Shown piece by piece: positions 3,008-43,094 of a DNA stretch of 64,000 bases. The stretch is taken from NCBI GenBank assembly GCA_965112735.1, contig OZ218953.1, forward strand, positions 2,480,001 to 2,544,000. The letters run 5' to 3'. Positions within the stretch are counted from its first letter, which is position 1; every line of letters begins with the position of its first letter. The notes beneath the pieces are model-generated. The model saw nothing but the letters and a program-made list of their open reading frames with translations, did not search any database and was not told the origin of the DNA. The position numbers were made by a program, and so were the translations under genes. Source of the stretch: Phaeosaccion multiseriatum (lineage: Eukaryota; Protista; Ochrophyta, other classes).

Positions 3008-4140
3008 ACGCGCTCAGAGAGGTTGAAGAACTCAATGACTTTGTGGGGCTTTTTGGCGCGAAAGGCGGCATTCATGGCCGCGTTGAGAGAAAATCTGCGC
3101 GGTCAGAGGTCAATAGGCGGGGGGGAGAGGGAAGGGAAAGAAAGCCCCCGCCCGGCCGCCAGGGGGTTAAGGGGCGGAGACAACAAATGACGAGGAGAGA
3201 GAATGTTAAGAAGGGGAGGCGGAGGAAGGCGAACATTGACAAGAGAGGGGAGGAAGAAGGAGAGAGGGACAAGTGGACGAGCGACTGCGAGGCCGTCTTA
3301 CCTGTCGAAGGGTATGCCCACCGCCAGCATTTGCTCGAAAAGCTCGACAGACTCCACGTACCGCCACTGCTTCGTCAGAGCGGCCTGCACGGCGGTGTAG
3401 TTGTGCACTAGCACGGACTTGGGGGCCATCTCCACAGCGGCGCTACCTTGATCAAGGGGAGGCCCACTACGTTGGCTTATGCTCTCTCCTGCTGCTGCTT
3501 CTGGTACGCTCCCTGGAGATGGTTGTGCGGCCCTTGTCCTCTTGCTACTGACGACACGTATCCTCCCTGTCTCCATCTCTCTGAGGAGCGACATCGCCCG
3601 GTCCACTTGCCTGCCCCCCACCCACGTCTTTATCGCCACCCGGAAGGCGAACTCGTCCACCAGACCCCGCTCTCGCGCGTCTGGAACCTCTCCTTCCAAG
3701 CTGTCCAACAGGGTGGACATGATGTCCCCCCACTTCCCTTCCCTTCCTAATTGCTGAATGTCACGCTGCGCGGTCTTGCTGCGGCTCTCTGTTGTCGGTT
3801 CCACTAAGCTGCTGCTTCCACGTACGGTTGGAGGAGGAGGAGGCGTGAGGGGAGGAGAGGAGGGATTCTGGAGTTCATCTCCGTTCACTCCTCCTACCAC
3901 CCCTACTCCTCTTCCTGTCCGTGGGTTCTCTGTGGCTGCTGTTCGTACCCTTGTTTCATAATACCGCCGCAAGCCAGTGCTGCTTGTGCTGGTACTTCTG
4001 GTTGTGCGGCTGGCCATGCACGTCTTGTGTTGGCCGAGCCCCGAGACAAACGCAGGGACTGGCCCACCAGAAGGCCCCCCATTAAACGTCGTAATGGGCG
4101 TGGAAAGCCCTTGCGCAAATACACTCCCCTCTCGGTGCAT
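1..4140 (-). CDS. Pentatricopeptide-repeat (PPR) protein, 3' end beyond window start
   Basis: Exons ~4140-3302, 3094-2661, 2467-2310 and ~2012-<1, with GT-AG junctions in compatible phase. Repeated PPR-like motifs: VHNYTAVQAALTKQWRYVESVELFEQMLAVGIPFD, PDAMTLGSVIGAHARLNHHADVVQLFEDMTLRRGIKP, PDQVSYSTAISALSRAGRSDEAFALLDQM, PSLSCYNSALEAC. The last exon is open to position 1; the start codon is uncertain. Confidence 0.85.
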
Positions 4141-4365
4141 CGTGTTGCACGTGAGGTGCAGGACCTCCTCGAGGGGGTGAAGCTGCTCAATTTTTTTTTA
4201 TGTTGACGATGCTCGCGAGCATGATGCGAGAGTGCCAGTTTCATGGCTGTGTGTGCTTGGGTTTGGCGTGACCCAAGCACAAGTACCGTGCCGTTAGAAA
4301 GCCGATTTCTATTCACAGGAAGAGAAGGACAAAAGAACAAAGGAGGACAGACAGGGAGCCCACGG

Positions 4366-6532
4366 ATGCCGACTTTTACCGCCAAAGATGGCACGGTGTT
4401 CACCGACAGGGGCAAGTACCGCAAGCACGTCTTCGCCACCGAGTACACGTTCAAGGAGGCATCTGGGAAGACGCTGATCAAGGCGCCCGGAGATATTGAC
4501 GGACAACCCTTCGATCTTACGAACCTCACGGATTGCGAGGTGCAGCTGCTCGATTACTCCGAGACGGTGCAGGCAGACGAGCTCAATGGCTGTAGGTGCG
4601 TAACCTTGCCAGCCAGGCGTCGGAGAGAGGGGTCAATCTGTATTGTTATCATGTCGGTGGCCTTCATTTTATACCTTTCTCTCTCGTTTTCCTCCCTGCA
4701 GAGTATTCTTGGCAGCATCTATGGACTCTGTGTTCGTGCGGAACTGCGAGGGCTGTACCTTTACCCTGGCATGCAAGCAATTGCGAACCAGAGACTGCAA
4801 GAATTGCACGTTCTGTAAGTCTCCTCTCTCTCCTCGTATGGCCCTCGCTTCCTTCCGACAGTGCTGTTTCGCCCCACTCCCCACCCCATCCTCCCGCAGC
4901 ACGAACGGCAGAGGCACTACGTGCACTCACCCCACTTTCCACCTCATCCCCCACTGACATGCAAGCATGCCGCCATCTGCTTTCCCCATCCTCTGCTTCT
5001 TCCCCCCCCCTGCATCTGACCAGACCTGTACTGCAAGACCGAGCCCATCATCGAGACGAGCTCCGGTATGTCCTTCGCGCCCTTCAACGGCGCCTACCCC
5101 GAGCATGGGGCGCACCTCCGTAGCGCCAACCTGGAAACCCCCAACCTGTGGTTCGCAGTGTATGACTTCAACGACGAGGCCAAGACGGGCATCAACTGGA
5201 GGCTCCTGGGGGAGGAGGAGAGGAGTGAGGCCGGTGAATGGAGACCCCAGGGTACGTGTCTCTCTGTCTTTCGATCTGTTTTACCTACCTGCATCTCTGT
5301 CTGTGTGTCTTCTTCGTCTGCCTCTCTCTTTGTCTTGTTGGCTGTCTGCCTCTCTCTCTGTAGGTGTATCTGTCCACCTCTCTTTCTGTCTTTCGTCTTG
5401 CCTTCCTCTGTCGGAAGTCTGGTTTGCCTTGGAGTCTTTTCTTGTCCGTTTGGTATGCAGGCACTCGTGCATGCTTTGCGTGCGTACATGCTTTCGCCCC
5501 CCCCCCGTCCTGATACCTCCACCTCTGTCTTCTCTCCTTCCTTGTCCCCGCAGGATGTGCCACGCCTATTGCGGTGCCGATCACCAACCCTGGAGACGTG
5601 CCCGTGCCGAGCCAGGGTGGTGGTGGGGACAACGGCAGTAGCAATGGTAGCGGCAGTGCTGCGCCACCACAAGGGCCCTCTCAGGGCAACAGCTTCATGT
5701 CCTTCGGCATCAACACCTCACAGCGGAGCGCCGAGCGAGCAGTAGATGACAAGGGGGCGAGTTTGAGTTCCAGTGCCACAGCAGGGCTGCTGTCTCCTCC
5801 AGATGGTGATGCTGGTGCTTCATCCCCGGTACCCCCCCCCGTTCCGGGGACAGTGCAGCGGCAGCAGCAGCAGCAGGAGGAGGAGGAGGAGGAAAAGGAA
5901 GAGAAAGAGGAGGAGGAGGAGGAGGAGGAGGAGCAAGGAGAGATAATGCTTGATGTGAAGCCTCTCCGCCTGGCCATCAAGGCGAACCCACCGGTCTTCG
6001 TCATGGAGTTCGAGTGAGTGCTTTCGGGGAGAGAGAGAACGATCGTCGAACTTGATGGAGTCCTGATGTGTGTGTGGAAGACATCGTGCTTCGACTGCTT
6101 ACTTGCTGCATCGCTCACGTCTTGTTGTGCCTCTTCAGATCTGCCGGTAAGCTCTACCAAAAGCACTGGTTCTTCAAAGGACTGCCGGAAGCGGGGTCAC
6201 AGGGGGTCGACGTGCGGACGCTGGCTCGGAGGATGTTCGACTGCAGCCCGGACTACCTCAGCCGCTCCAAGGTGTCTGTTAGGCAGGTGGAGACCCTCCT
6301 ACAGGCAATGGTGGAGGGTGCAAGAGAAGGAGGAGGAGGAGGAGGAGGAGGAGGAGTAGGAGGAGGAGGAGGAGTAGCAGATTGGGGAGGGGGTAAAGAC
6401 GCGGGCGCACCTCCTCTCCCTCCTCCTGCCGCACTTCTAGCGAAGATCGGAGGAGAGGAAGTGTCCAGGAGCAGCAACAGCAGCAGTAGTAGCAGTCATA
6501 CGGGCAGCAGTAGCAGCAGCAGTGGCAGCAGT

Positions 6533-6590
<58 letters not shown>

Positions 6591-7968
6591 CGAGTGGAGG
6601 AGTCCTTGGCGGGCTGCCTCCCCTTTCTTCTCTGTCAAGAAGGCCTCCGCTTCCCTCCCTCGACAAGGGCAGCAGCGCTGGCTCGGACGCGAACGGGAGT
6701 AAGTCCTTGGAGACGCAGCAGCACCCGCGGGAGAGGGGACCAGGGGAAGGAGGGAAAGCAGAGCAACAAGACGAGGAAGAGGAGAAGGAGGTAGAAGACG
6801 AGCAAGATCAGCAGCACTCGACGCCGCTGAAGCACAAAAAGGTGGAGGGCGACGAAGATGAGTGGGACCCTGATGACCTGGAGCAGATGCTCGCGGACGA
6901 GGAGGAACGCATGGGCATGCAGGAGGATGAGGAGGCCACCACGGCCCCTACCACCCCTGTCGGTGCCGGTGGTGCTGCGGCGGCCGCTACGAATACTCCT
7001 GCTGATGCTCTCTCCGCTGCCGGCGACGCCCGTGACCACGCGAGTGCCGAGAGCAGTGGCAGTGTTGGTAGTAGCAGTAGTAGTAGTAGTAGTTCAAGTG
7101 GGGTAGATGGAGAGGAGGGCCCGGCCCCTTTCGACTCCCCCTTCGGCATGGACTCGGGGGGGAGCGGAGGGCTCAAGGAGGAGAAGTCCGTTCGGTGGGT
7201 GGAGATGGCCGCGGCCCCCGACGGGGAGGATGGACCGTATGGAGCGGCCCGAATGGCCGACGCCGATGACCTCAATCGGGTAAGGAGAAGACGAGAGGAG
7301 AGGAGCGAGAAGGGAGGGGGAGGGGAGGCGGGACTCCGACTGAGGTCCTTTGGGGGGCTTGCCTGAGGGGGGGGGGGGGGGGGATCCAACTTTAGGAGTG
7401 TTTTGACCTTTGCTGCGTGCTTCTTTCTTTCTTACCCCCCTTCTTCTTCTTCTTCTTCTTCTTCTTCTTCTTCTTCTTCTTCTTCTTCTTCTTCTTCTTC
7501 TTCTTCATGTTTCCGGGGGGGGATTGTTTGTTTGCACACCAGGCCAGCGAGGGGGAGCTGCGAAGGGCTAAGGCAGAGATGAGCATAAGCTTTATGCAGA
7601 ACCTCCTGCGGCCTGGGGACCAGGGCTACGTGCACGACAAGCGCATCGACTTTGAGGGGCCCAGCGAGGACAATGACTGGGACGAGGACGAGGACGAGGA
7701 CGACGGAGAGGAGGATGGAGGGAGGCGTGGCGGTGCTACCTCTGCTACTGTTGGTGGTGGTGCTGGAGCTGGAGCTGCTGCTGCTGCTGCTGCTCCTGCT
7801 GCTGCTGTCGGGGAAGGGGGGGGGGGCGGAGGGGCAGGGACTGCAGGGCAGGCCGCGGAGAAAGAGGAGGAGGGGAGGGGAAAGGGGGATGAGGAAGATG
7901 AGGTTGAAGAGGAAGTTGAGGAGGAGGACTTCGACGAGTACTCAGATGCCTCCTTCGACGAATGCTGA
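4366..7968 (+). CDS. TBCC-domain (RP2/XRP2-like) protein fused to a split CEP19-like domain
   Basis: Six exons 4366-4595, 4702-4814, 5024-5251, 5554-6013, 6139-7279, 7543-7968, all GT-AG and phase-compatible. The N-terminus has TBCC/RP2 signatures (PGDIDGQPF, SVFVRNCEGCTFTLACKQLRTRDC, YCKTEPIIE, NLWFAVYDFN). The C-terminal half has CEP19-like blocks (LAIKANPPVFVMEFE, VSVRQVETLL, DDLNRASEGELRRAKAEMSISFMQNLLRPGDQGYVHDKRIDF...DWDED). Confidence 0.8.
7441..7506. repeat. (TTC)n microsatellite in intron
   Basis: Perfect TTC run inside the last intron of the TBCC-CEP19 gene. Confidence 0.95.
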
Positions 7969-8324
7969 CGACTAAGCTAGAGACGGACCAGGCAGCCGGA
8001 CGCGTGTTGAGGGGCGACGGACACAAGACCTCGAGGTCGATAACGACAAGCAAGCAAGGAGGCGCAGCCACCTGCCACCTGCCATCTACCACCAGCTGCC
8101 GACAGCCACGCACACACGCCGCTGAGGCTTCGCAGAGAAGGGACTCTAAGTTGCGCCCTTCTCCGAGAGCCACTTATCCTTGTGCCAATTGTATTCTGCA
8201 GCAGCTAGACAGCGAGTGTCCCTGCCTCACGGCCCAGCCACCAGTACATACAGCTCCACGCATCCACGCACCCTCGCATTCTATTACAGCCGTGTGCCAA
8301 CATCAGCTCTCAATGGCCTTCGCG

Positions 8325-8640
8325 CATATGCATACACACAAACTCAGACACGCACACACACACACACACAAACTCATGCACGCGCACACTCACGCACACG
8401 CACGCACACACACAAACCCACACGCACACACACATGCACACACACACACACATGCACACACACATAAACCCGTGCACGCACACACACAAACTCATGCACG
8501 CACGTACACACACGCACGCACGCACACACACACACACATACAGACACAAAGACAAACACAAAAAGTGCACGCACACACACGCACACACGCAGACTCACGC
8601 TCTCGCACACACATACACACACCCACACACACACACACTC
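8325..8640. repeat. Degenerate (CA)n/(CACG)n microsatellite
   Basis: Long interrupted CA-rich tract in intergenic DNA. Confidence 0.9.
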
Positions 8641-41489: not shown

Positions 41490-43094
41490 ATGAGTACAGA
41501 TTACAAGCGCTTGGCTCGCTCTCGCTTCCCGAGTATACAAGAGCGAGAGACCGCAGAGGCTCGGTACTGGCGTCGCTTCACACAGCCCATCCTCATCACC
41601 AAGTCGTCCTCAGCAAGTAGTATCCACTTCAGCCCAGCCGCTCCCCATCACTTTGCGGTGACATGGTCCACGAACGTCTCGGTGCATGATGCGAGGACTG
41701 GGAAGGAGCAGCGGAGCCTGGGGAGAGCAGAGGCGGCGTGCTACAGCGGGCGGTTCCGGCACGACGGCAAGCTGCTGGCCTGTGGAGATGCCATGGGATC
41801 ATTGCGTGTGTTAGACGTCGTGAGCAAAGGAGTGTTACGGCACTACAAGGAGCACGAGGGGGCGGTGCGGGCCGTGGGATGGTCGGCGAACGGGACCGCG
41901 TTAGCTTCTGCGGGAGATGACAAGGTGGTGAGGATCTGGGATCTGCCCTCGCAGGACGGATCTCGGGCACTGATGAGTGGTCACACAGACTATGTGCGGG
42001 CGATTGAGGCCAGCCCGGTTGGCGGGGGGGATATTTGGCTCAGTGCCAGCTACGACCATACAGCGCGACTTTGGGATGCTCGACTGCCGAGTCGAGACCA
42101 GGGAGGGGTGCTGAGCCTCCAGCACGACGCTCCACTGGAGACGTGCTTGTTCTTGCCGGGAGGAGGGCTTGTGGCGTGCGCCGCGGGCAACGAGGTGAAG
42201 GTGTGGGATCTCGTCGGAGGAGGGAGGCTGCTGCACACGTGCAGTAACCACCTCAAGACCATTACCTGCCTCGCCATGGACGGTACAGGCACCCGGTTGC
42301 TCTCCGGTGGGCTGGATCGGCAAGTCAAGGTGTATAGTCTGCAGAGCTACCGCGTGACACATGGCCTGCGCTTCCACGCCCCCGTCCTCAGCCTGGCGCT
42401 ACCACGGGACAGCTCCTTGCTGGTGGCCGGCACGACGGACAATGTCCTAACCATTCGGAAGCGAAAGGAAGGGTCTGCCACGGGTAGCTTGCAGTACGGG
42501 GACAGCAGCAGCAGTGGCGTGCAGGGCGGAGACAGCAGCAGAGGGAGGGCGCTGAATGAAGGCGTGGCCCCTCATCCAGGCTCCAAGCGGTACCGGGAGA
42601 GAGGCAAAGGGGCAGTGGCCGGGGCGGGAGACGCCACAGTCACGGTGGCGAGGAGCAGTAAGTCACTCAAGGTGTACGACAAGAGCCTCAAGGCGTTCCA
42701 GTACCAGGCCGCACTCGACCAAGCACTAGACACGCGGGACCCCGTGGTGGTAGTGACGGTGCTCGAGGAGCTGAGGCAGAGGGGCTGCAGTAGCGGGCTC
42801 AAGACGGCTCTGGCCTCTCGAGACGAGCAGAGGTTGGAGCCGTTGCTGGCCTTCCTCACGAGGTACATTGTCAACCCTCGGTATGCGCCGCTGCTGTGCG
42901 ACGTTACTGAAGCTGTGCTGGACCTGTACGGCGATGTGTTGGGCGAGAGCGAGGCCATCGATGAGCTGTTTGCCAAGCTCTGCGGGCAGGTGCGCATGGA
43001 ACTGGACTTTCAGAAACAAATGCAGGCTCTCAAGGGGAGCTTGGACACCGTGCTGGCGTGCTCTTCTTCGGCGGCAGCGGCCCTCTCCAGATGA
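41490..43094 (+). CDS. UTP15: U3 snoRNA-associated protein 15 (WD40 repeats plus UTP15 C-terminal domain)
   Basis: Intronless 534-aa ORF. N-terminal TAEARYWRRF, WD repeats (FRHDGKLLACGD, GHTDYVRA, SASYDHTARLWD, NHLKTITCL, LLSGGLDRQVKVY) and C-terminal YDKSLKAFQYQAALDQAL...VTVLEELRQRG...ALASRDEQRLEPLLAFL...PRY. Confidence 0.92.
   Translation: MSTDYKRLARSRFPSIQERETAEARYWRRFTQPILITKSSSASSIHFSPAAPHHFAVTWSTNVSVHDARTGKEQRSLGRAEAACYSGRFRHDGKLLACGDAMGSLRVLDVVSKGVLRHYKEHEGAVRAVGWSANGTALASAGDDKVVRIWDLPSQDGSRALMSGHTDYVRAIEASPVGGGDIWLSASYDHTARLWDARLPSRDQGGVLSLQHDAPLETCLFLPGGGLVACAAGNEVKVWDLVGGGRLLHTCSNHLKTITCLAMDGTGTRLLSGGLDRQVKVYSLQSYRVTHGLRFHAPVLSLALPRDSSLLVAGTTDNVLTIRKRKEGSATGSLQYGDSSSSGVQGGDSSRGRALNEGVAPHPGSKRYRERGKGAVAGAGDATVTVARSSKSLKVYDKSLKAFQYQAALDQALDTRDPVVVVTVLEELRQRGCSSGLKTALASRDEQRLEPLLAFLTRYIVNPRYAPLLCDVTEAVLDLYGDVLGESEAIDELFAKLCGQVRMELDFQKQMQALKGSLDTVLACSSSAAAALSR

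What the first reader, a model, noticed from the sequence alone, without database searches (positions are those of the whole stretch)
4366..7968. RP2/TBCC-domain protein fused to CEP19: two ciliary small-GTPase modules in one gene
Seen: an in-frame spliced path from a TBCC domain (KQLRTRDC, with the catalytic-type Arg) into segments resembling the CEP19 N-terminal block and its C-terminal DLN...M..F..N....D..YV.D...F....WD block, separated by about 300 aa of low complexity. Established: RP2 is the GAP for ARL3 (ciliary lipidated-cargo release), and CEP19 recruits RABL2 to the basal body for IFT entry; in animals they are separate genes. Inference: a Rosetta-stone fusion that anchors an ARL3 GAP at the ciliary base, where RABL2 and ARL3 pathways converge on IFT-B.
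Basis: partly seen in the sequence, partly recalled or inferred. Interest (0 to 1): 0.8.

Follow-up and report, generated by a model that had tools for sequence, protein, structure and literature searches.

The report
RP2-like GAP fused to CEP19
This stramenopile alga has one six-exon gene that joins an RP2-type GTPase-switch-off domain to a complete CEP19, the protein that docks the RABL2 GTPase at the base of the cilium; a second alga has the same join, so two ciliary GTPase pathways that are separate in animals sit on one chain here, though no RNA data could be obtained to prove a single transcript.

Summary
Window 4366-7968 (+) reads as six GT-AG exons, 2598 nt in all, giving 865 codons plus a stop.

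- **TBCC domain.** Exons 1-3 give a complete Pfam TBCC domain. It is closer to human RP2 than to cofactor C, and it keeps the Gln116, Arg118 and Glu138 equivalents.
- **CEP19.** Exons 4-6 give a complete CEP19. The C-block hits Pfam at E 8e-12. The N-block was confirmed with a profile I built. About 315 low-complexity residues lie between the two blocks.
- **Splice sites.** All five introns are backed by collinear profile or ortholog matches.
- **The join.** One stop-free stretch (5514-6014) carries both the RP2-family-specific extension and the first strand of CEP19.
- **Second species.** Chrysoparadoxa australica has an annotated 645-aa protein with TBCC plus CEP19. Its CEP19 exon has no ATG of its own.
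- **Not fused elsewhere.** Brown algae, Triparma, oomycetes and 17 marine metagenome orthologs have the RP2-like protein without CEP19.

Caveats:
- The four runs found were genomic DNA, so there is no RNA evidence.
- The reading frame passes through a C9 run (5832-5840). One of four DNA read sets shows C10 there, which would stop the RP2 part right at the retained CEP19 ATG (5946).
- Function (an ARL3 GAP anchored at the basal body) is inferred.

No paper I could search describes this architecture. I rate it a new variant of known kinds.

The parts
4366..4595 (+). Exon 1: start codon (MPTFTAKDG, no Gly2) and the N-terminal RP2-like region with the first turns of the beta-helix
   Evidence: Pfam TBCC profile 1-31. 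Hits only RP2 in PDB, residues 32-89. Orthologs are contiguous with exon 2 with exactly one codon between them.
4702..4814 (+). Exon 2: beta-helix core with KQLRTRDC (4775-4798); the Arg-finger codon is 4784-4786
   Evidence: Pfam TBCC 33-69, E 4e-10. RP2 91-124 at E 2e-6 against TBCC at 0.012, and the Arg aligns to RP2 R118.
5024..5251 (+). Exon 3: end of the TBCC domain (PIIETSS with the Glu138 equivalent; NLWFAVYDFND; NWRLLGEEER)
   Evidence: Pfam TBCC 71-120, E 3e-10. PDB RP2 129-192 and TBCC. 60-77% identical to stramenopile orthologs.
5554..5772 (+). Exon 4, 5' part: the extension specific to the stramenopile RP2-like family (CATPIAVPITNPGDVPVPSQGG ... NSFMSFGINTSQRSAERAV)
   Evidence: An HMM of the ortholog extensions hits the exon 3 piece at hmm 1-36 (E 2e-16) and this piece at hmm 36-102 (E 1e-9), collinear, which validates intron 3 and the frame. 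tblastn to L015-L017 gives E 7e-5. Codon score is positive only in this frame.
5773..5945 (+). Exon 4 linker: low complexity, a C9 run at 5832-5840, then (CAG)n/(GAG)n at 5849-5942 encoding poly-Q/E. Frame continuity between the two modules rests on this stretch.
   Evidence: No stop in frame. Run X3 shows C10, X1 and X4 show C9, and the X2 contig ends inside the run. +1 C gives a stop at 5951-5953 and -1 C gives a stop at 5944-5946.
5946..6013 (+). Exon 4, 3' end: retained CEP19-type ATG and the first strand of the CEP19 N-block (MLDVKPLRLAIKANPPVFVMEF)
   Evidence: Custom CEP19 N-block HMM positions 2-22, E 8e-3 among 1729 window pieces. phmmer to the P0130 N-terminus gives E 1e-4. The Met lies at the same distance from the conserved Arg as in free-standing CEP19s.
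6139..6325 (+). Exon 5 head: the rest of the CEP19 N-block (the FOP-binding, centriole-targeting region in human CEP19)
   Evidence: Custom HMM positions 35-81, E 2e-4, the best hit in the window. For the role of the N region see PMC5469608.
6326..7264 (+). Exon 5 middle: about 315 aa of low-complexity insert (poly-Gly, poly-Ser from (AGC)n, acidic stretches) between the CEP19 N- and C-blocks
   Evidence: Open frame of 380 codons. Long inserts at the same place occur in other CEP19s: P0003, P0130, P0126.
7265..7279 (+). Exon 5 end: DDLNR, the start of the CEP19 C-block
   Evidence: Continues in phase 0 into exon 6. The DLN(K/R) motif is conserved in all homologs.
7543..7968 (+). Exon 6: CEP19 C-block (7543-7690; the RABL2-binding region in homologs), a Gly/Ala- and acid-rich tail, and stop TGA 7966-7968
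   Evidence: Pfam CEP19 105-151 of 151, E 8e-12. 381 homologs at E <= 1e-3, best 55-62% identical. RABL2-binding region mapped in PMC5469608 and PMC10505919.
4596..4701 (+). Intron 1 (GT-AG)
   Evidence: Intronless orthologs have exactly one codon between the exon 1 and exon 2 matches.
4815..5023 (+). Intron 2 (GT-AG)
   Evidence: Same evidence as intron 1. Pfam profile is continuous, 69 to 71.
5252..5553 (+). Intron 3 (GT-AG, CT-rich, strong polypyrimidine acceptor)
   Evidence: Family HMM junction at position 36. Negative codon score in all frames.
6014..6138 (+). Intron 4 (GT-AG), which splits the CEP19 N-block
   Evidence: Collinear HMM hits 2-22 and 35-81 on either side.
7280..7542 (+). 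Intron 5 (GT-AG), containing a G17 run and (CTT)n
   Evidence: Phase-0 junction DDLNR|ASEGEL matches the contiguous CEP19 C-block of homologs.

Best explanation
A single gene encodes an 865-residue protein with two ciliary modules.

The N-terminal module is an RP2-type TBCC beta-helix with an intact arginine finger, so it is most likely a GTPase-activating domain for ARL3.

The C-terminal module is a complete CEP19. [quoted passage not shown]

Fusion would tether the ARL3 GAP at the ciliary base. That keeps ARL3-GTP low outside the cilium, at the same site where RABL2 is loaded.

Mammalian RP2 reaches the base by N-terminal acylation and trypanosome RP2 by TOF-LisH motifs. This alga has neither, so CEP19 would be a third targeting solution.

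Shown here: domain identities, splice junctions, in-frame continuity in the assembly, and the same architecture in Chrysoparadoxa. Inferred: a single transcript, GAP specificity, RABL2 and FOP binding, and localisation.
For: - **Domains and phases:**
- **RP2 rather than TBCC:** P0155 residues 1-215 give 104 bits to RP2 against 60 bits to TBCC. Our exon 1 hits RP2 only, and exon 2 hits RP2 at 2e-6 against TBCC at 0.012.
- **Catalytic residues:** Q116, R118, R120 and E138 equivalents are present.
- **CEP19 N-block:** top two of 1729 window pieces.
- **The join:** stop-free piece 5514-6014 holds both the RP2-family extension (hmm 36-102, E 1e-9) and the start of CEP19. No stop separates the modules in the assembled sequence.
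- **Read support:** contigs of runs X1 and X4 agree with the assembly across 4000-5848 without gaps.
- **Independent species:** Chrysoparadoxa P0155 has TBCC 46-162 plus CEP19 408-596. Its CEP19 exon lacks any in-frame ATG.
- **Adjacency:** having the only two relevant genes next to each other on the same strand and in frame is very unlikely by chance.
- **Literature:** N-terminally tagged CEP19 still localises, the N region binds FOP and the C region binds RABL2 (PMC5469608). The minimal RabL2-binding region is mapped in PMC10505919. RABL2-GDP acts as an ARL3 GEF (PMC10450674). CEP19, RABL2B and ARL3C sit on trypanosome transition fibres (PMC11190437).
Against: - No RNA evidence: the four runs found are genomic DNA.
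- ATG 5946 sits exactly where free-standing CEP19 proteins start.
- The 173 nt between the validated RP2 extension and that ATG are a C9 run plus trinucleotide repeats, which carry no coding signal of their own.
- Run X3 reads C10, which would end the RP2 part at TGA 5951-5953.
- None of the 150 nearest CEP19 representatives has TBCC. None of the 17 metagenome orthologs or the brown-algal, Triparma or oomycete orthologs has CEP19. The fusion is therefore rare.
- The domain lacks RP2's acylation motif and NDK-like domain, so its ARL3 specificity is not assured.
Confidence: 0.75

Rival explanations
1. Two cistrons, not one protein. The RP2-like ORF really ends at the CEP19 start, because the C-run is C10 or C8 in the organism or in part of the population. 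CEP19 is then translated on its own from ATG 5946, either from an internal promoter or from a bicistronic mRNA. The apparent fusion would be a homopolymer miscount or a polymorphic state.
For: - The X3 contig has one extra C at 5831-5840.
- +1 C gives TGA 5951-5953 and -1 C gives TAA 5944-5946, so both alternative frames stop within 5 nt of ATG 5946.
- The Met sits at the canonical CEP19 start position.
- There is no coding signal between 5773 and 5945 (repeats).
- There is no RNA data.
Against: - X1 and X4 contigs match the assembly (C9) with no gaps.
- X2 and X3 disagree with each other and with the assembly at other homopolymers (5002, 5496). They also show minority -1 calls at 7137 and in the G7 run at 7156, inside exon 5, where the frame is independently validated. 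Their homopolymer counts are therefore unreliable.
- Chrysoparadoxa has a true fusion with no CEP19 ATG.
- Overlapping stop and start with an internal promoter is unusual for a eukaryotic nuclear gene.
Confidence: 0.17
2. The gene is fused, but the TBCC-type domain does not act on ARL3. It would act like cofactor C on ARL2/tubulin, or only bind a GTPase or tubulin. The fusion would then serve tubulin handling at the basal body rather than lipidated-cargo release. This follows the alternative model proposed for trypanosome RP2.
For: - Exon 3 is about equally close to TBCC and RP2.
- The protein lacks RP2's NDK-like domain and acylation signal.
- TBCC-family GAPs for ARL2 exist (PMC3667724, listed).
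- The reference list of PMC11190437 cites an alternative model for TbRP2.
Against: - Over the whole domain the family scores 104 bits to RP2 against 60 bits to TBCC.
- Exon 1 hits RP2 only.
- There is no TBCC_N domain.
- The RP2 N-terminal region (residues 32-89) is matched. From my own knowledge, not checked here, that region contacts ARL3 in the solved complex.
Confidence: 0.2
3. Gene-model artefact. Exon 4 contains a further, unrecognised intron or an alternative acceptor, so the RP2-like mRNA leaves frame 0 and ends before CEP19. The two genes would merely be neighbours.
For: The other two frames of exon 4 have stops at about 5640 and 5745 that could end a shorter RP2-like protein. No RNA data.
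Against: - The family-specific extension is matched in frame 0 up to about 5772, past both of those stops.
- The acceptor at 5553 has by far the strongest polypyrimidine tract.
- Orthologs all continue well beyond this point.
Confidence: 0.05

Closest known systems
Chrysoparadoxa australica 'unnamed protein product' (P0155, 645 aa; GCA_964200425.2, contig CAXMZZ020000099.1)
   Same: Same order of parts: RP2-like TBCC domain, family extension, then a complete CEP19 (Pfam TBCC 46-162, CEP19 408-596). The TBCC exons are 65-69% identical.
   Different: - It keeps two GWN-type repeats and a coiled segment before CEP19, which the window gene lacks.
- It has no Met at the CEP19 start.
- Its spacer between the CEP19 blocks is short.
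- It has many more introns, and its locus is 51% GC against 59% here.
- It is annotated only as unnamed. I found no description of it.
Human RP2 (XRP2; PDB 2BX6, 3BH6/3BH7)
   Same: Beta-helix TBCC-type domain, collinear match to RP2 residues 32-192, with Gln116, Arg118, Arg120 and Glu138 equivalents kept.
   Different: No Gly2/Cys3 acylation motif. No C-terminal NDK-like domain, which is replaced by a family-specific extension and CEP19.
Trypanosoma brucei RP2 (TOF-LisH + TBCC)
   Same: A TBCC-domain GAP-type protein brought to the mature basal body or transition fibres by a fused centriole-targeting module from the FOP-family neighbourhood (PMC6070722).
   Different: The targeting module is N-terminal TOF-LisH (FOP-like) in the trypanosome. 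Here it is C-terminal CEP19, the FOP-binding partner.
CEP19 (human C3orf34; Chlamydomonas CEP19)
   Same: Both conserved blocks are present and in order: the N-block (FOP binding and centriole localisation) and the C-block (RABL2-GTP binding).
   Different: About 530 residues are added in front (RP2-like module and linker), and about 315 low-complexity residues lie between the blocks. Free-standing CEP19s are mostly 150-250 aa.
Stramenopile RP2-like family (Ectocarpus, Scytosiphon, Undaria, Triparma, Phytophthora, marine metagenome loci L004-L020)
   Same: Orthologous N-terminus (M..FTA.DG.VFTDR), TBCC domain at 60-77% identity, and the extension W.P...PRV..GS.ALPSQG...SF..T.
   Different: These continue with GWNPDAF-type repeats and other C-termini (a CCDC34-like region in Triparma). 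None has CEP19.

Membership tests
TBCC / C-CAP beta-helix domain (Pfam PF07986) | Full-length match to the domain profile above the gathering score | tested here: met
   Exons 2 and 3 each score about 40 bits (cut-off 24.8). The three exons cover profile 1-31, 33-69 and 71-120 collinearly.
RP2 (XRP2) subfamily | Closer to RP2 than to cofactor C over the domain and its N-terminal flank | tested here: met
   Exon 1 hits RP2 only, at E 1e-3. Exon 2 hits RP2 at 2e-6 against TBCC at 0.012. Ortholog P0155 scores 104 bits to RP2 against 60 bits to TBCC. Exon 3 alone is ambiguous.
RP2 (XRP2) subfamily | Arginine finger (Arg118), with Gln116 and Glu138 | tested here: met
   KQLRTRDC aligns to RP2 QQFRVRDC. 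PIIET aligns to RP2 PIIES, with E138 kept.
RP2 (XRP2) subfamily | N-terminal myristoylation/palmitoylation motif (Met-Gly-Cys) | tested here: not met
   The N-terminus is MPTFTAKDG. The stramenopile orthologs checked (P0155, P0157, L007, L009) also lack Gly2.
RP2 (XRP2) subfamily | C-terminal nucleoside-diphosphate-kinase-like domain | tested here: not met
   No NDK-type Pfam hit in exons 4-6. The extension matches only RP2's linker up to about residue 213.
RP2 (XRP2) subfamily | GAP activity on ARL3 | not testable with these tools
   Needs a biochemical assay or a multimer model with the alga's ARL3, whose sequence is not in the window.
CEP19 (Pfam PF14933) | Conserved C-terminal block (DLNK...PGD.GY.YD...WD), the RABL2-binding region | tested here: met
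   E 8e-12, 46 bits (cut-off 27), profile 105-151. 381 homologs found. Atlas CEP19 clusters score 0.93.
CEP19 (Pfam PF14933) | Conserved N-terminal block (R.AL...PP....EY ... helix), the FOP-binding and centriole-targeting region | tested here: met
   Pfam did not detect it on the split pieces. A custom HMM of 20 homologs ranks the two pieces first and second of 1729, collinear at hmm 2-22 and 35-81.
CEP19 (Pfam PF14933) | Binding of RABL2-GTP and localisation to the basal body | not testable with these tools
   Inferred from PMC5469608 and PMC10505919.
Single-gene fusion (Rosetta-stone protein) | Both modules in one uninterrupted reading frame | tested here: met
   Stop-free piece 5514-6014 holds the RP2-family extension and the start of CEP19. 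Exon lengths sum to 2598 nt, a multiple of 3. Caveat: the C9 run at 5832-5840.
Single-gene fusion (Rosetta-stone protein) | One transcript spanning both modules | tested here: inconclusive
   The look-up of sequencing runs returned only genomic DNA runs, whose contigs contain the introns.
Single-gene fusion (Rosetta-stone protein) | Same architecture in another species | tested here: met
   Chrysoparadoxa australica P0155. Absent from all other orthologs examined.

The most novel reading that the evidence does not exclude
The fusion records a physical partnership that exists in ciliated eukaryotes generally. Under this reading RP2 (the ARL3 GAP) works in one complex with the CEP19-FOP-RABL2 module at the transition fibres, so that switching ARL3 off and loading RABL2 onto IFT-B are coupled steps of one GTPase relay. 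This would predict an undescribed RP2-CEP19/FOP interaction in human and Chlamydomonas cells. That interaction would bear on RP2-linked retinitis pigmentosa and on CEP19/RABL2 ciliopathies.
Probability: 0.2. Interest if true: 0.8.

Novelty: new variant of a known kind. Interest (0 to 1): 0.6.

Why it matters
RP2 and CEP19 are both human disease genes: X-linked retinitis pigmentosa for RP2, and morbid obesity and ciliopathy for CEP19. Both act at the ciliary base, but in pathways usually drawn apart.

A natural fusion found in two algae is classic Rosetta-stone evidence that the ARL3 and RABL2 switches are functionally linked. It independently echoes the 2023 report that RABL2-GDP activates ARL3.

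It also shows a third evolutionary way of placing an RP2-type GAP at the basal body, after lipid anchors in animals and TOF-LisH motifs in trypanosomes. That argues that location at the ciliary base is the selected property.

It gives a concrete prediction to test in model organisms: RP2 proximity to CEP19/FOP.

Tried and rejected
- **RNA evidence.** All are genomic, since their contigs span the introns. The splice and transcript test could not be done.
- **Pfam on the split CEP19 N-block.** No hit. A PDB sequence search with the N-block gave only chance hits, and with the C-block gave none.
- **Word searches with exon 6 and the exon 5 head.** Nothing found. The length windows excluded full-length fusions.
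- **Exhaustive search with the CEP19 C-block.** 381 homologs, but none of the 150 shown has TBCC. The top hit, P0001, is a 7571-aa serine-rich low-complexity artefact.
- **Genomic context of CEP19 homologs.** P0002, P0038, P0006 and P0011 are all free-standing, with unrelated neighbours.
- **The window's own annotation.** Not on record for two nearby single-exon ORFs.
- **Atlas search with P0155.** No large cluster combines TBCC and CEP19.
- **Earlier scan notes.** Nothing on CEP19, RP2, ARL3 or RABL2 in this genome.
- **Intron-3 retention as the RP2 end (stop at 5745).** Considered and rejected. That tail has a negative codon score, and the family extension is found in the spliced frame instead.
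- **Organism.** It could not be named. Notes and homologs point to an ochrophyte stramenopile near brown algae and Chrysoparadoxa.
Full report
**Gene model.**
Reading 3800-8600 and translating candidate exons gives six exons on the + strand:
- E1: 4366-4595
- E2: 4702-4814
- E3: 5024-5251
- E4: 5554-6013
- E5: 6139-7279
- E6: 7543-7968

All introns are GT-AG. The split codons fit (AG|A, T|AC, G|GA, GA|A, and phase 0). The exon lengths sum to 2598 nt, which is 865 codons plus TGA.

**The RP2-like half.**
- Pfam TBCC hits E1, E2 and E3 at profile positions 1-31, 33-69 and 71-120, so introns 1 and 2 are confirmed by profile continuity.
- Seventeen marine metagenome loci encode orthologs that are 40-74% identical in E3, most of them 60-74%. 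Where they have no intron there, the E1, E2 and E3 matches lie exactly one codon apart, as the split codons require.
- Against solved structures, E1 matches only RP2, residues 32-89. E2 matches RP2 91-124 at 2e-6 against cofactor C at 0.012. E3 matches both about equally.
- The intact ortholog P0155 scores 104 bits to RP2 against 60 bits to TBCC.
- KQLRTRDC aligns with RP2 QQFRVRDC. This puts the Arg encoded at 4784-4786 on the Arg118 finger, and PIIET keeps Glu138.
- The protein has no Gly2 acylation signal and no NDK-like domain.

It is therefore RP2-like in its catalytic domain but not a canonical RP2.

**The CEP19 half.**
- E6 hits Pfam CEP19 at E 8e-12 over profile 105-151. Atlas features agree.
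- An exhaustive phmmer search finds 381 relatives, the best 55-62% identical.
- The N-block escaped Pfam when the two pieces were scanned apart.
- I built an HMM from the N-termini of 20 of those homologs and searched all 1729 stop-to-stop pieces of the window. The two best hits are piece 6056-7363 (hmm 35-81, E 2e-4) and piece 5514-6014 (hmm 2-22, E 8e-3). Everything else has E >= 10. This confirms the N-block and intron 4.
- Long inserts between the N- and C-blocks occur in other CEP19 proteins too.

**Are the halves one gene?**
- Stramenopile orthologs of the RP2-like protein continue past the TBCC domain with a conserved extension: W.P...PRV..GS.ALPSQG ... SF..T...A.
- An HMM of that extension hits the E3 piece at positions 1-36 (E 2e-16) and piece 5514-6014 at positions 36-102 (E 1e-9).
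- So intron 3 and its frame are right. The same stop-free piece that ends with the first CEP19 strand begins with RP2-family sequence.
- A simple codon-usage score favours this frame over 5556-5846.
- In the assembled sequence the RP2-like frame therefore has no stop before CEP19.
- A word search seeded from a long ortholog ORF found a 645-aa annotated protein of Chrysoparadoxa australica with TBCC 46-162 and CEP19 408-596.
- In its genomic locus the exon that starts the CEP19 N-block follows an acceptor and has no in-frame ATG.
- That species differs clearly from ours: its locus is 51% GC against 59% here, the TBCC exons are 65-69% identical, and the intron pattern is different.

**Caveats.**
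- The only sequencing runs found are genomic, because their contigs include the introns. Transcript structure is untested.
- ATG 5946 lies exactly where free-standing CEP19s begin.
- Between the validated extension (to about 5772) and that ATG lie only low complexity, a C9 run (5832-5840) and CAG/GAG repeats.
- The contig of run X3 has one extra C there. X1 and X4 match the window, and the X2 contig ends inside the run.
- One extra C would stop the RP2-like frame at TGA 5951-5953, and one fewer at TAA 5944-5946. Both stops fall at the CEP19 ATG.
- X2 and X3 also disagree with each other and with the assembly at two intronic C-runs. They carry minority -1 calls at 7137 and in a G7 run at 7156, inside exon 5, whose frame is independently fixed.
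- I therefore read the X3 call as homopolymer noise, but it keeps a two-cistron reading alive at about 0.17.

**Distribution.**
- None of the 150 nearest CEP19 representatives has a TBCC domain.
- CEP19 genes in compact marine contigs are free-standing.
- Orthologs of the RP2-like protein in Ectocarpus, Scytosiphon, Undaria, Triparma, Chrysophaeum, Phytophthora and the 17 metagenome loci lack CEP19.
- No large Atlas cluster combines the two families.
- The fusion is thus confined, as far as I can see, to this alga and Chrysoparadoxa. I could not decide between one origin and two.

**Mechanism (inferred).**
- Human CEP19 uses its N region for FOP binding and centriole localisation and its C region for RABL2. 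N-terminally tagged CEP19 still localises (PMC5469608).
- The minimal RabL2-binding region of Chlamydomonas CEP19 is the C-terminal half (PMC10505919).
- RP2 is the ARL3 GAP (background in PMC10450674).
- Trypanosome RP2 reaches the basal body through fused TOF-LisH motifs (PMC6070722).
- CEP19, RABL2B and ARL3C are all transition-fibre proteins in trypanosomes (PMC11190437).
- RABL2-GDP was reported to be an ARL3 GEF (PMC10450674).

The simplest reading is an ARL3 GAP tethered through CEP19 to the distal basal body, next to the RABL2 loading site.

**Novelty.**
Full-text searches for CEP19 with TBCC, and for CEP19 with RP2 and ARL3, returned no description of such a fusion. The Chrysoparadoxa protein is deposited only as unnamed. 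I rate this a new variant of known kinds, of moderate to good interest.

Noticed in passing
L007-L019; P0151-P0163 (orthologs), compared with window 5554-5772: The stramenopile RP2-like family has an apparently undescribed conserved C-terminal extension (WCP.GP.ENCCPRVA.GS.ALPSQG ... GGM.SF..T...AA.ATGD.Y.AQET), followed by two to many K-x-x-(V/I)GWNPDAF repeats. Triparma proteins end in a CCDC34-like region. The window gene keeps the extension but has no GWN repeats.
   Followed up: partly
window 5832-5840, 5002-5010, 5497-5506, 7156-7162, 7816-7826: Long C and G homopolymers lie inside and beside coding sequence. The short-contig runs X2 and X3 miscount several of them (-1/-3, +3/+2, +1). 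Homopolymer length in this assembly therefore deserves a check wherever a reading frame depends on it.
   Followed up: partly
window 5849-5942, 6316-6384, 6480-6598, 7440-7512: There are coding trinucleotide microsatellites: (CAG)n/(GAG)n giving poly-Q/E, (GGA)n giving poly-G, and (AGC)n giving about 30 Ser. Intron 5 holds a (CTT)n tract of about 24 units next to a G17 run.
   Followed up: no
window 41490-43094 (+): An intron-less 534-aa gene for UTP15 (WD40 repeats plus UTP15_C, E 4.5e-44). It is not on record as a called gene in the public collection, so this genome appears to be unannotated there.
   Followed up: partly
window 8340-8600: An AC-rich imperfect microsatellite (ACACACGCAC...) of about 260 nt lies just downstream of the gene's stop. 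It produces long spurious ORFs on both strands.
   Followed up: no
P0154, P0159, P0162, P0167, P0168, P0170: Other predicted proteins join this RP2-like TBCC domain to unrelated domains: HIT/DcpS, glycosyltransferase, Asp/Arg hydroxylase plus sulfotransferase, and others. These may be real fusions or merged gene models. I did not examine them.
   Followed up: no
L002 (Logan SRR33514625 contig, 1209 nt): A CEP19 homolog starts at MPVRHLK, which lacks the first N-block strand, and overlaps the end of an upstream signal-peptide-like ORF. This may be a truncated CEP19 or a contig artefact.
   Followed up: no
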